Counted from the whole stretch's first letter, positions 5,533 through 6,582 are shown. The stretch: 63,661 nucleotides of DNA, filler included, from Octopus bimaculoides (GCF_001194135.2; 6 parts of 5 records of this genome joined end to end with filler, not necessarily neighbours in it); one strand, 5' to 3'. Program-made: numbers and translations. Notes: generated by a model from the sequence alone, not told the origin.

Positions 5533-6582
5533 TCACTCTACAACAAAATATGGATCACAGCCATAAGTAACACGTATACTAACATTCTCTAAATTTTCAG
5601 TAGATTCTGGAGATAATTTGACAAAGAAATTATGTCCATCTGGCTTTCCCAAATTCAGTTCTGATGTGCCTTCAGCTAACAATGTAACTGGGTCTGAACC
5701 ATCCCCCTCTGTTAGCATATTGCTCTTTGATACCTTAATATGAACTTCACCACACATACTAGTGGCAGTAATTGTAATATTCCCAGCCCAGCTTGGATAA
5801 ACAAAATCAAAGACTGGGTTTGCTTTCTCTGACACTGTAATACCTGAGACTGTTTTGTTAAATGGCAATCCTCGAATATGTTTCTCTACATCACATGGTT
5901 TAATTCCCACAAGTTCATAGGTTTTAATAAAGGGGGTTAGATCTTGCCCAAGATCGTAGGCAACCTTCAACACATCACAAGCCCCAGAAGTGAAATCTGA
6001 ATGAGGATGCCAATATATTTCATTGGCAATAAGGAAAACTCGGTAAGCTTCCTTGATATCCATTTTTAATTCGTGTACAATGTAGTAAAACATAAAATTA
6101 TAAATCCCACTTCCATGATGAGGATCCATTTGTTTAGTGAAGTTATCCACATGACTTATAGATTTATTGTCCAAGGATGGGTCTGCCATAAATCTCAATG
6201 CTTCCTCATCTTTTATGATGTTGAATCCAACTAACCAGTCAGTTTTATCTATATAAGCTTCATTGACTTCTCCTGTCATATCAGAAAAAGCCTCATTCAT
6301 AGATCCAGACTCATCAAAGTAAAGCAATTCAGAGTGTTGATATGTGAAGCCATGCGCAAGTTCATGCCCGACAATATCAGCATCTGTGAAAGGATAAAAG
6401 TTTGTATAGCCATCACCAAACGAGCAATATTTCCCATTCCAAAATGCGTTTTCATAATTTTCTCCAAAGTGAACACGCAATGTAGCTTGTTTGTTTAGTA
6501 TTGAAGTATTATACCATTCCTGAAACATTTGAGATACCACACTGCCGTAATAGAAAACATCAAGTGCAGGAGATATATTTTC
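5533..6582 (-). CDS. Peptidase M4 (thermolysin/vibriolysin/elastase-like) zinc metalloprotease, large exon with catalytic domain and C-terminal PPC-like domain; 5' part missing
   Basis: Frame is open from 6612 to TGA at 5533-5535. Translation ISPALDVFYYGSVVSQMFQEWY...LRVHFGENYENAFWNG...FGDG...HELAHG (HExxH at 6352-6366)...GSMNEAFSD (third Zn ligand Glu at 6292-6294)...DWLVG...LRF...DPHHGSG...GAC...GIKPC aligns motif by motif with vibriolysin/LasB as I recall them. A possible phase-0 acceptor CAG lies at 6583-6585. Confidence 0.93.
   Translation of the reverse strand, partial: ENISPALDVFYYGSVVSQMFQEWYNTSILNKQATLRVHFGENYENAFWNGKYCSFGDGYTNFYPFTDADIVGHELAHGFTYQHSELLYFDESGSMNEAFSDMTGEVNEAYIDKTDWLVGFNIIKDEEALRFMADPSLDNKSISHVDNFTKQMDPHHGSGIYNFMFYYIVHELKMDIKEAYRVFLIANEIYWHPHSDFTSGACDVLKVAYDLGQDLTPFIKTYELVGIKPCDVEKHIRGLPFNKTVSGITVSEKANPVFDFVYPSWAGNITITATSMCGEVHIKVSKSNMLTEGDGSDPVTLLAEGTSELNLGKPDGHNFFVKLSPESTENLENVSIRVTYGCDPYFVVE

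What the first reader, a model, noticed from the sequence alone, without database searches (positions are those of the whole stretch)
5533..6582. Bacterial-type thermolysin-family (M4) protease embedded in an animal genome: candidate domesticated horizontal transfer
Seen in the sequence: a ~350-codon reading frame with no stop, frameshift or intron, in a window where almost every other long ORF is decayed. It keeps both Zn histidines and the catalytic Glu (HELAH), the third ligand (NEAFSD), the Tyr, Arg and His equivalents (LLYF, LRF, DPHHGSG), the acidic calcium-site residues (D..I, GEVNE, DWLVG) and the C-terminal Cys pair (GAC...KPC). It shares a contig with animal SINEs and microsatellites and is AT-rich like its flanks, which argues against contamination. 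Established knowledge: MEROPS M4 is mainly bacterial (thermolysin, vibriolysin/HapA, LasB), and these are secreted, often virulence-associated enzymes. The NAFWNG..FGDG...FYP and DxHHxSG signatures point to the Vibrio/Pseudomonas subgroup. Inference: the gene derives from a marine gamma-proteobacterium and was co-opted as a secreted digestive, salivary or defence protease. The transfer may be old and shared with other molluscs, and I cannot check whether it is already described.
Basis: partly seen in the sequence, partly recalled or inferred. Interest (0 to 1): 0.85.

Follow-up and report, generated by a model that had tools for sequence, protein, structure and literature searches.

The report
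Truncated dead copy of octopus M4 protease
The reading frame is a real thermolysin-family (M4) protease sequence of bacterial ancestry in the Octopus bimaculoides genome, but bacterial-origin Zn-metalloproteinase genes of this kind were already reported there in 2018, and this copy has lost its first 44% and carries a premature stop, so it is most likely a pseudogene.

Summary
On the minus strand, 6612..5536 is a 359-codon open frame. From 6576 downward it is a vibriolysin/pseudolysin-type M4 peptidase (Pfam M4 and M4_C; LasB E=1e-58) with all catalytic residues kept.

It is not a whole gene. It matches residues 290-656 of the intact 656-aa O. sinensis protein P0134, encoded at the syntenic locus. 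The signal peptide, propeptide and first ~66 residues of the mature enzyme are absent from the frame. Homology to five other copies stops at 6576/6577, where 4.2 kb of unrelated, transposon-rich DNA begins. A TCA->TGA change removes the conserved Cys-containing tail. An intact promoter and exon 1 survive at 11145..11097 but cannot splice in frame. The window-branch substitution ratio (13 nonsynonymous : 4 synonymous) looks neutral, though it is not significantly different from the ortholog's.

The RefSeq model (432 aa) joins two exons from the interposed DNA to an internal acceptor.

The family is real animal DNA: a spliceosomal intron, a tandem array, and members named in cephalopods, gastropods and bivalves. 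Seven bacterial-origin Zn-metalloproteinase genes were already reported in O. bimaculoides (Liu et al. 2018, PMC6011040); three of them are the M4 neighbours of this locus. This copy is an unlisted, dead eighth member. Low interest.

The parts
5533..6576 (-). Remnant of exon 2 of an M4 (vibriolysin/pseudolysin-type) peptidase gene. It holds the C-terminal part of the Peptidase_M4 domain, the whole Peptidase_M4_C domain, and a divergent PPC-like domain. It ends at a premature TGA (5535-5533).
   Evidence: Pfam; LasB alignment, residues 67-295; 82.8% identity to residues 290-656 of O. sinensis P0134; 90.6% nucleotide identity to L014 15591-16708; PPC homology by hhalign, probability 89.8%, E=1.7e-6.
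6577..6612 (-). Twelve extra open codons upstream of the breakpoint that are not M4 sequence. They are a chance read-through into the adjoining unrelated DNA.
   Evidence: Homology to L003, L013, L012, L001 and L014 stops at 6574-6577 in every case. The frame is closed by TAA at 6615-6613.
5479..5532 (-). Former last 17 codons (DMDNLAYFRMCATEIRH) and the ancestral TAA stop (5481-5479), now untranslated behind the nonsense codon. They include the conserved tail Cys.
   Evidence: Three-way DNA alignment: window TGA = TCA in paralog L003 = TCC in L001. The downstream sequence and the stop still align with O. sinensis.
4203..5468 (-). 3' flank collinear with the 3' flank of the O. sinensis ortholog (blocks 5202-5468 and 4203-4768). 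Between the blocks lies a microsatellite-rich stretch.
   Evidence: blastn against L014 17640-18496, 84-89% identity; repeat-coded ORF at 4853-5335.
11097..11145 (-). Intact exon 1 of the same gene: ATG plus 16 1/3 codons (MRHLMVIFYSWHLLFG, the signal-peptide start), followed by a GTAAGT donor (phase-1 intron).
   Evidence: Sequence; alignment with exon 1 of P0135, P0127 and P0137; collinear with L014 exon 1. No AG before 6485 gives an in-frame join to the remnant.
11146..11535 (-). Conserved promoter / 5'UTR region with TATAAATA at 11228-11221.
   Evidence: 76.7% identity to L012 2600-3167; 86.6% to L014 9298-10186; alignment.
6577..10805 (.). 4.2 kb of DNA unrelated to the ortholog's intron and exon 2. 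It stands where the rest of the intron and the first ~830 nt of exon 2 should be. It contains a PIF1-like helicase ORF (8690-9787), a further ORF at 8382-8672, and an unclassified ORF (7312-7791).
   Evidence: No collinear match to L014 10745-15590. PIF1 Pfam E=7.2e-61. Window 7624-7766 matches a non-collinear site in L014 (8199-8340), which suggests a repeat.
10806..10847 (.). Assembly gap (42 N) inside the former intron, ~70 nt below the last intron block that matches the ortholog.
   Evidence: N-run listing.
16452..16500 (-). Second, decayed exon-1 copy: ATG kept, TATA box deleted, donor GT changed to GC. It is a relic of the tandem array and is also present upstream of the O. sinensis ortholog.
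   Evidence: Collinear with L014 1-484.
5536..8554 (-). Span of the RefSeq model P0001 ('hemagglutinin/proteinase-like', 432 aa). Exons: 8554-8480, 7821-7588, 6519-5536. Its first 104 residues come from the interposed non-M4 DNA, and it enters M4 at an internal acceptor (tttcag|GAATGG).
   Evidence: tblastn of P0001 on the window; locus L002.

Best explanation
The frame is a unitary pseudogene: the 3' 56% of one member of the Octopus M4 zinc-metalloprotease family. That family descends from a vibriolysin/pseudolysin-type bacterial gene acquired by an early mollusc. Intact members are two-exon genes. Exon 1 encodes the first 16-17 residues of a signal peptide. After a phase-1 intron of 2.8-4.7 kb, exon 2 encodes everything else: an FTP/PepSY-type propeptide, the M4 catalytic domain, the M4_C helical domain, a divergent PPC domain and a Cys-containing acidic tail. 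By analogy with the bacterial enzymes (inferred), they are made as secreted zymogens whose propeptide assists folding and is then removed. In this locus a rearrangement removed most of the intron and the first ~830 nt of exon 2; 4.2 kb of unrelated, partly transposon-derived DNA now stands there. This is inferred to have happened in the O. bimaculoides lineage, because the syntenic O. sinensis gene is intact. A later or earlier TCA->TGA change cut off the tail. The remnant cannot be joined in frame to its own surviving exon 1. It has no signal peptide or propeptide and lacks about 66 residues of the catalytic domain, so it should not yield an active protease (inferred from established M4 biology). 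It looks well preserved because the loss is recent (dS 0.11 to the ortholog) and because its last ~350 nt have been homogenised by gene conversion with a live paralog about 50 kb away.
For: Truncation: Pfam matches only positions 62-144 of 145 of Peptidase_M4; the LasB alignment starts at mature residue 67. tblastn with longer or full-length homologs (P0003, P0004, P0006, P0011, P0014) finds nothing N-terminal of the breakpoint anywhere in the piece, and the frame aligns to P0134 residues 290-656 only. The same breakpoint, 6574-6577, appears against five other loci. Orthology: eight collinear blocks with the O. sinensis P0134 locus span upstream region, promoter, exon 1, intron start, exon 2 remnant and 3' flank. 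P0134 is an intact 656-aa two-exon gene. Nonsense: TGA against TCA/TCC, with the downstream codons and ancestral stop still alignable. Exon 1: intact, but no in-frame AG acceptor before 6485. Constraint: NG86 dN/dS against the ortholog is 0.85 (0.71 in the catalytic part), against 0.24-0.55 for the catalytic part of pairs that exclude the window copy. The window branch carries 13 nonsynonymous: 4 synonymous changes, including E->Y at a position that is acidic in the other 13 aligned sequences. Gene conversion: 67 differences from paralog L003 in the first 684 nt, but only 2 in the next ~350 nt; in that tract dS is 0.028 to the paralog and 0.125 to the ortholog. Family context: three same-strand copies lie at 51.44-51.51 Mb of CM046611.1, and the intron/exon structure is seen in L012. 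The published cDNA products match the neighbours, not this copy.
Against: The retained part has no frameshift and keeps every catalytic and invariant residue. The excess of nonsynonymous change on the window branch is not significant (Fisher p=0.53), and the family as a whole evolves fast. NCBI's pipeline predicts a protein-coding model here (P0001), so some transcription may exist. A 42-N assembly gap lies in the former intron, and the two neighbouring copies also have gaps in or next to the 5' part of exon 2. This array was evidently hard to assemble, so part of the apparent truncation could be an assembly fault.
Confidence: 0.8

Rival explanations
1. Assembly artefact: the real gene at this locus is intact, and the junction at 6577 and/or the missing 5' part of exon 2 come from mis-joining or collapse of near-identical tandem copies in assembly GCA_001194135.2.
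For: There is an N gap at 10806-10847 in the former intron. Gaps sit inside exon 2 of paralog L003 (19916-20154), directly upstream of exon 2 in L013 (9465-10572), and in L012's flanks, so this region was hard to assemble.
Against: The junction at 6576/6577 lies in 4.2 kb of gap-free sequence, far from the N run. The nonsense codon, the window-specific substitutions and the near-neutral ratio do not depend on scaffold structure. The copy is distinct from every other copy (81-92% identity to the published cDNAs), so it is not a collapsed duplicate.
Confidence: 0.1
2. A functional chimeric or shortened gene. Either the RefSeq-type transcript (non-M4 5' exons plus M4 from EWYNTS onward) or exon 1 spliced to a cryptic in-frame acceptor (for example 6383) gives a protein used for something other than classical M4 proteolysis, such as a binding or decoy protein built from the helical and PPC-like domains.
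For: There is a long open frame with all invariant residues and a RefSeq model. In-frame AG sites for exon 1 exist at 6485, 6461 and 6383. Promoter and exon 1 are intact.
Against: The RefSeq model's N-terminus (MFSFQGCSFIPRCQTCRLTSADRSS...) has no hydrophobic signal-peptide core (my reading of the sequence). The product would lack the propeptide that M4 enzymes need for folding (established knowledge) and half of the N-terminal beta domain. The conserved tail Cys is lost. The window-branch substitution ratio is near neutral. No identical or near-identical protein from transcriptome-type sources appeared in the 5.8-billion-protein search.
Confidence: 0.07
3. Bacterial contamination or a very recent transfer of a bacterial gene into this contig.
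For: The closest non-mollusc relatives are gammaproteobacterial M4 enzymes (~45% identity over the catalytic part).
Against: The locus is embedded in a chromosome-scale scaffold between animal repeats. It is syntenic with O. sinensis. Its own spliceosomal intron and exon 1 are present. It is 82-85% identical to other octopus copies but only ~45% to any bacterium. Its G+C matches the host.
Confidence: 0.01

Closest known systems
Octopus bimaculoides ZnMP1-7, the horizontally acquired Zn-metalloproteinases of Liu et al. 2018 (Data Brief PMC6011040; Gene doi 10.1016/j.gene.2018.05.013)
   Same: Same species. ZnMP3 (XP_014776931 = P0127), ZnMP4 (XP_014776937 = P0137) and ZnMP5 (XP_014781458 = P0135) are M4 genes on the same chromosome, and ZnMP3 and ZnMP4 sit in the same tandem array. 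The window copy is 84.7% (P0127), 78% (P0137) and 71% (P0135) identical to them in protein. The published cDNA PCR products match those loci at 99%.
   Different: The window copy is not one of the seven. It matches the three ZnMP products compared here at only 81-92%, and ZnMP6 lies on another chromosome; ZnMP1, 2 and 7 were not compared. It is 5'-truncated and carries a nonsense codon. No expression data exist for it.
O. sinensis 'elastase' P0134 (656 aa), the syntenic ortholog
   Same: Collinear locus. 90.6% nucleotide and 82.8% protein identity over the shared part. Same exon 1 and promoter.
   Different: P0134 is intact: signal peptide, propeptide, full catalytic domain and tail. The window copy lacks the equivalent of residues 18-289 and the last ~19.
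Pseudolysin (LasB, MEROPS M04.005) and vibriolysin (M04.003) of Gammaproteobacteria
   Same: Same fold family and catalytic machinery (HExxH, Glu in NEAFSD, Tyr, His in D-x-H-H-x-S-G). The second disulfide pair is kept. Intact octopus members have the same overall architecture: signal peptide, FTP/PepSY propeptide, M4, M4_C, PPC.
   Different: The octopus members are animal nuclear genes with a spliceosomal intron. Their PPC domain is divergent (not detected by Pfam) and they have an extra Cys-containing acidic tail. The window copy is only a fragment.
Unprocessed (duplicated/unitary) pseudogenes in tandem gene arrays
   Same: Disabling truncation and nonsense codon, an intact ortholog in a sister species, a near-neutral substitution pattern, and gene conversion with a live neighbour.
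   Different: Nothing notable. This is the ordinary fate of array members.

Membership tests
MEROPS M4 / Pfam Peptidase_M4 + Peptidase_M4_C (sequence membership) | Scores above the curated Pfam gathering thresholds for both domains | tested here: met
   M4_C 87.8 bits (cut-off 24.4); M4 78.6 bits (cut-off 22.4).
MEROPS M4 (active enzyme) | HExxH zinc-binding helix and third ligand Glu about 20 residues downstream (NEAFSD) | tested here: met
   HELAH and NEAFSD align to LasB HEVSH and NEAFSD. They are invariant columns.
MEROPS M4 (active enzyme) | Transition-state residues Tyr (LasB Y155) and His (LasB H223) | tested here: met
   LLYF aligns with LIYR; DPHHGSG aligns with DVHHSSG.
MEROPS M4 (active enzyme) | Complete N-terminal beta-rich catalytic subdomain | tested here: not met
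   Only Pfam profile positions 62-144 of 145 are matched. LasB mature residues 1-66 have no counterpart. tblastn finds none elsewhere in the piece.
MEROPS M4 (active enzyme) | N-terminal propeptide (FTP/PepSY), needed as intramolecular chaperone, and a secretion signal | tested here: not met
   Both are absent from the frame. Paralogs and the ortholog have them. Exon 1 survives at 11145-11097 but cannot be joined in frame.
MEROPS M4 (active enzyme) | Zinc-dependent, phosphoramidon-sensitive endopeptidase activity | not testable with these tools
   Needs recombinant protein.
Vibriolysin/pseudolysin subgroup of M4 | Closer to LasB/vibriolysin than to thermolysin/bacillolysin | tested here: met
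   LasB E=1e-58 against thermolysin E=4e-21. The NJ tree groups all mollusc sequences with the vibriolysin/pseudolysin-type bacterial sequences, at 100% bootstrap against the bacillolysin outgroup.
Vibriolysin-type architecture | C-terminal PPC (pre-peptidase C-terminal) domain | tested here: inconclusive
   Pfam PF04151 is not detected. A profile-profile comparison of 25 mollusc C-terminal domains with 13 bacterial PPC domains gives probability 89.8%, E=1.7e-6 over 98 columns.
Bacterium-to-animal horizontally transferred gene | Animal sequences nest among bacterial ones and have no close homologs in other eukaryotes | tested here: met
   All named non-bacterial hits are molluscs. The 46-sequence clade has only 52-53% NJ bootstrap for monophyly, and its exact bacterial sister is unresolved. 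Liu et al. 2018 reached the same conclusion with ML/NJ trees.
Bacterium-to-animal horizontally transferred gene | Physical integration in the host genome (host flanks, introns, synteny) | tested here: met
   Synteny with O. sinensis; a phase-1 spliceosomal intron with GTAAGT...TTTAG; a tandem array on a chromosome scaffold.
Pseudogene | Disabling lesion relative to an intact ortholog | tested here: met
   Loss of the equivalent of P0134 residues 18-289, plus TCA->TGA.
Pseudogene | Relaxed selective constraint | tested here: inconclusive
   dN/dS 0.85 against the ortholog. Window branch 13N:4S against ortholog branch 24N:13S, Fisher p=0.53.

The most novel reading that the evidence does not exclude
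The remnant is not dead but serves as a sequence reservoir or as a new gene. Two routes are possible. Through ongoing gene conversion it could feed variation into the neighbouring live M4 genes. Or a chimeric transcript, driven by the surviving promoter or by the interposed DNA, could give a shortened, non-proteolytic helical-plus-PPC-like protein with a new role. Beyond this locus, the data suggest that one vibriolysin-type gene entered before the split of cephalopods, gastropods and bivalves and gained an intron within its signal peptide. That is broader in taxa than the 2018 octopus-only data article shows.
Probability: 0.08. Interest if true: 0.45.

Novelty: already known. Interest (0 to 1): 0.15.

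Why it matters
For this locus, very little: it is one more decayed member of a tandem array. It also shows that the RefSeq model 'hemagglutinin/proteinase-like' (432 aa) is a chimera of interposed non-M4 exons and a protease fragment, and that model should not be used in protease inventories or phylogenies.

For the family, the work confirms a published bacterium-to-mollusc transfer independently and adds some detail. There is a shared two-exon structure with an intron inside the signal peptide. The whole vibriolysin architecture is retained, including a divergent PPC domain. At least three copies form a same-strand array. Named members occur in three molluscan classes.

That breadth could be worth a proper phylogenetic study, but it is an extension of known work, not a discovery.

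Tried and rejected
1. I looked for the missing N-terminal part elsewhere in the piece with tblastn of longer and full-length homologs. Nothing was found.

2. I first suspected that the neighbouring paralog P0127 had an internal deletion. It is an assembly N-gap that the gene model spliced over.

3. I considered the 'ttctttccag' at 6609-6599 as the acceptor of an upstream exon. This was rejected: homology in five intronless comparators runs straight through this point, and the AG is out of phase with exon 1.

4. A profile search with the mollusc C-terminal domain alone (A4) returned no hits at all, not even the source proteins.

5. Pfam did not recognise the C-terminal domain or the ORF at 7312-7791. 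That ORF remains unclassified.

6. The bacterial promoter/terminator scan is irrelevant in AT-rich animal DNA and was ignored.

7. Seven text searches on thermolysin, M4, mollusc and HGT wording missed the key paper, and searched for an abalone metalloprotease paper without success. The key paper was found only by searching for the paralog's accession number. The companion paper in Gene is not held.

8. The organisms behind the unnamed Logan/ENA homologs (P0004, P0010, P0011 and others) could not be determined from sample accessions.

9. Branch-specific dN/dS has too few sites to separate pseudogene from fast-evolving gene.

Full report
**What is there.** The piece comes from Octopus bimaculoides chromosome scaffold CM046611.1, at about 51.44 Mb. 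On the minus strand a frame is open from 6612 to 5536 and ends at TGA 5535-5533. Pfam finds Peptidase_M4_C (87.8 bits) and Peptidase_M4 (78.6 bits), but the latter only over profile positions 62-144 of 145. The best solved structure is Pseudomonas elastase LasB (E=1.2e-58), aligned from mature residue 67 to 295. Thermolysin is far weaker, at 4e-21. HELAH, NEAFSD, the Tyr, the DPHHGSG His and the GAC...KPC cysteines are all present, and the copy keeps all 43 invariant columns of a 14-sequence alignment.

**It is a fragment.** Intact Octopus proteins of this family are about 650 aa long. They have a signal peptide, an FTP/PepSY-type propeptide, the catalytic domain, the helical domain, a roughly 120-aa C-terminal domain and a Cys-containing acidic tail. 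The window frame aligns to residues 290-656 of O. sinensis P0134 (82.8% identity) and to residues 149-507 of the neighbouring paralog P0127 (84.7%). tblastn with longer and full-length homologs finds nothing N-terminal of this anywhere in the piece. DNA homology to five other loci (L001, L003, L012, L013, L014) stops within three bases of each other, at window 6574-6577. The twelve open codons above that point are unrelated sequence.

**Gene structure and the surviving exon 1.** The intact paralog P0135 has two exons. Exon 1 carries residues 1-17, a 2.8-kb intron follows, and exon 2 carries residues 18-653, with a GTAAGT donor and a TTTAG acceptor in phase 1. The window holds an intact copy of that exon 1 at 11145-11097 (MRHLMVIFYSWHLLFG, then GTAAGT), with a TATAAATA box at 11228-11221. 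A second, decayed copy has its ATG at 16500, its TATA box deleted and its donor changed from GT to GC. No AG between 6700 and 6486 lets exon 1 join the M4 frame in phase. The first in-frame AG sites are at 6485, 6461 and 6383.

**Orthology.** The O. sinensis P0134 locus (L014) is collinear with the window in eight blocks:
- upstream region: 16351-16815, 15016-16006 (two overlapping matches) and 14474-14821;
- promoter and exon 1: 10963-11817;
- start of the intron: 10917-10979;
- exon 2 remnant: 5467-6574, at 90.6% identity;
- 3' flank: 5202-5468 and 4203-4768.

What corresponds to L014 10745-15590 is missing. That is the rest of the intron plus the first ~830 nt of exon 2. In its place stand 4.2 kb of unrelated DNA (6577-10805) and a 42-N gap (10806-10847). 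The unrelated DNA contains a PIF1-like helicase ORF (Pfam E=7e-61) and an unclassified ORF at 7312-7791, part of which matches a non-collinear site in L014. Because P0134 is intact, I infer that the loss happened in the O. bimaculoides lineage.

**Second lesion.** In a three-way DNA alignment the window's TGA stands where the paralog has TCA and O. sinensis P0003 has TCC. The next 17 codons, including the conserved tail Cys, and the ancestral TAA are still recognisable. The stop is therefore premature.

**Constraint and gene conversion.** NG86 dN/dS between the window copy and its ortholog is 0.85 (0.71 in the catalytic part). For the catalytic part of pairs that exclude the window copy it is 0.24-0.55. 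With two paralogs as outgroups, the window branch has 13 nonsynonymous and 4 synonymous changes. That is about what I would expect with no selection (roughly three nonsynonymous sites per synonymous site; my estimate, not computed). The ortholog branch has 24 and 13. The difference is not significant (p=0.53). One window-specific change is E->Y in the HGFTEQ motif, at a position that is acidic in the other 13 aligned sequences. The window copy and paralog L003 differ at 67 of the first 684 nt but at only 2 of the next ~350 (window ~5891-5545). In that tract dS is 0.028 to the paralog and 0.125 to the ortholog. This indicates recent gene conversion, and it partly explains why the remnant looks so clean.

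**The database model.** RefSeq P0001 ('hemagglutinin/proteinase-like', 432 aa) is built from exons 8554-8480, 7821-7588 and 6519-5536. Its first 104 residues come from the interposed non-M4 DNA, and it enters M4 at an internal tttcag|GAATGG acceptor. It has no signal peptide or propeptide and lacks even more of the catalytic domain.

**The family and the transfer.** Three same-strand copies lie within about 72 kb: the window copy at 51.4385 Mb, P0137 at 51.4575-51.4669 Mb and P0127 at 51.4896-51.5110 Mb. P0135 lies at 6.84 Mb of the same chromosome, and another member lies on a different chromosome. Named members occur in:
- cephalopods: O. sinensis, O. vulgaris and Argonauta;
- gastropods: Haliotis species, Patella, Pomacea, Batillaria and Aplysia;
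- bivalves: Solemya, Tegillarca and Pinctada.

The Haliotis rubra gene body is also a single exon. In NJ trees the 45-46 mollusc-type sequences form one clade with 52-53% bootstrap. That clade sits with the bacterial vibriolysin/pseudolysin-type sequences, at 100% against the bacillolysin outgroup. Its internal branching loosely follows taxonomy, with octopod, caenogastropod and bivalve groups. The exact bacterial sister is unresolved. The C-terminal domain is a divergent PPC domain (hhalign probability 89.8%, E=1.7e-6; not seen by Pfam). The whole bacterial architecture therefore came across. Contamination is excluded by synteny, the intron and host-like composition.

**Prior knowledge.** Liu et al. 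2018 (Data in Brief, PMC6011040; companion paper in Gene, doi 10.1016/j.gene.2018.05.013) reported twelve bacterial-origin genes in O. bimaculoides. Seven of them are Zn-metalloproteinases (ZnMP1-7). The authors gave phylogenies and RT-PCR from hepatopancreas, and their title calls the transfers ancient. Their PCR products match L003 (ZnMP3, 99.3%), L013 (ZnMP4, 99.1%) and L012 (ZnMP5, 99.0%), all of which are M4 loci. The window copy matches those three products at only 92%, 83% and 81%. ZnMP6 (XP_014782361) lies on another chromosome. ZnMP1, 2 and 7 were not compared with the window. I conclude that the window copy is an eighth member, not listed there.

**Verdict.** The sequence feature is real and correctly classified. 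The specific claim that this frame is a complete, domesticated, secreted protease is not supported. The most likely reading (about 0.8) is a recently disabled pseudogene in a tandem array. The main caveat is the assembly quality of this array (about 0.1). Interest is low.

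Noticed in passing
window 8690-9787 and 8382-8672 (minus strand): A 365-aa open PIF1-like helicase ORF (Pfam E=7e-61), followed by a 96-aa ORF that may be its C-terminal continuation. It could be a Helitron-type element. It is as long and as intact as the M4 frame, and it lies inside the DNA that replaced the gene's intron and 5' exon 2. Whether it caused the deletion is unknown.
   Followed up: partly
window 7312-7791 (minus strand), decayed down to about 6590: A 159-aa ORF with no Pfam match, which supplies exon 2 of the RefSeq model. Part of it (7624-7766) matches a non-collinear site in the O. sinensis locus (L014 8199-8340), so it is probably a repeat. The decayed continuation reads '...RKIIWFTPPFSLNIK...'. 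It remains unclassified.
   Followed up: partly
window 5545-5891 versus L003: Gene-conversion tract between the dead copy and the live paralog P0127 about 50 kb away: 2 differences in ~350 nt, against ~10% divergence upstream.
   Followed up: yes
window 16452-16500 (minus strand) and L002 18823-18888: Extra solo copies of the signal-peptide exon 1. One is decayed, 5.3 kb upstream of the intact one, and is also present in O. sinensis. Another sits in an ~850-bp direct repeat (91.8% identical to window 10963-11797) that lies downstream of the gene, beyond the start of the piece. Both look like relics of array turnover.
   Followed up: partly
L001 9468-10004 versus 10001-11473 (O. sinensis P0003 locus): The propeptide-encoding ORF and the 490-aa catalytic ORF are in different frames and overlap by 4 nt. 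This is either a frameshift pseudogene or a homopolymer error in the long-read assembly. H. rubra L004 shows a similar frame change at 5788.
   Followed up: no
L003 19916-20154; L013 9465-10572; L012 1381-2013: Assembly gaps fall inside or right next to the 5' half of exon 2 in the neighbouring M4 copies. RefSeq models P0127 and P0137 splice across the gaps, so they lack or duplicate propeptide segments. P0137 carries a repeated LLGLKEYEEVEESNRIKTAEG... block.
   Followed up: partly
window 2678-3205 (minus strand): A reverse-transcriptase fragment (RVT_1, E=5e-11), cut by the edge of the piece. Further LINE-like ORF fragments lie at 12485-12913 and 13619-13987 (plus strand).
   Followed up: partly
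window 19000-21138: G+C rises to 0.48-0.50, against ~0.3 elsewhere. ORFs at 19676-20020 and 20718-21089 (minus strand) have no Pfam match (only the first was tested). This could be another repeat or an unrelated exon.
   Followed up: no
GenBank AJF36072.1 (P0385), Haliotis discus hannai: A researcher-submitted 'metalloprotease' entry of 667 aa belongs to the same mollusc M4 clade, so at least one abalone member has been deposited individually. No paper on it was found in the library.
   Followed up: partly
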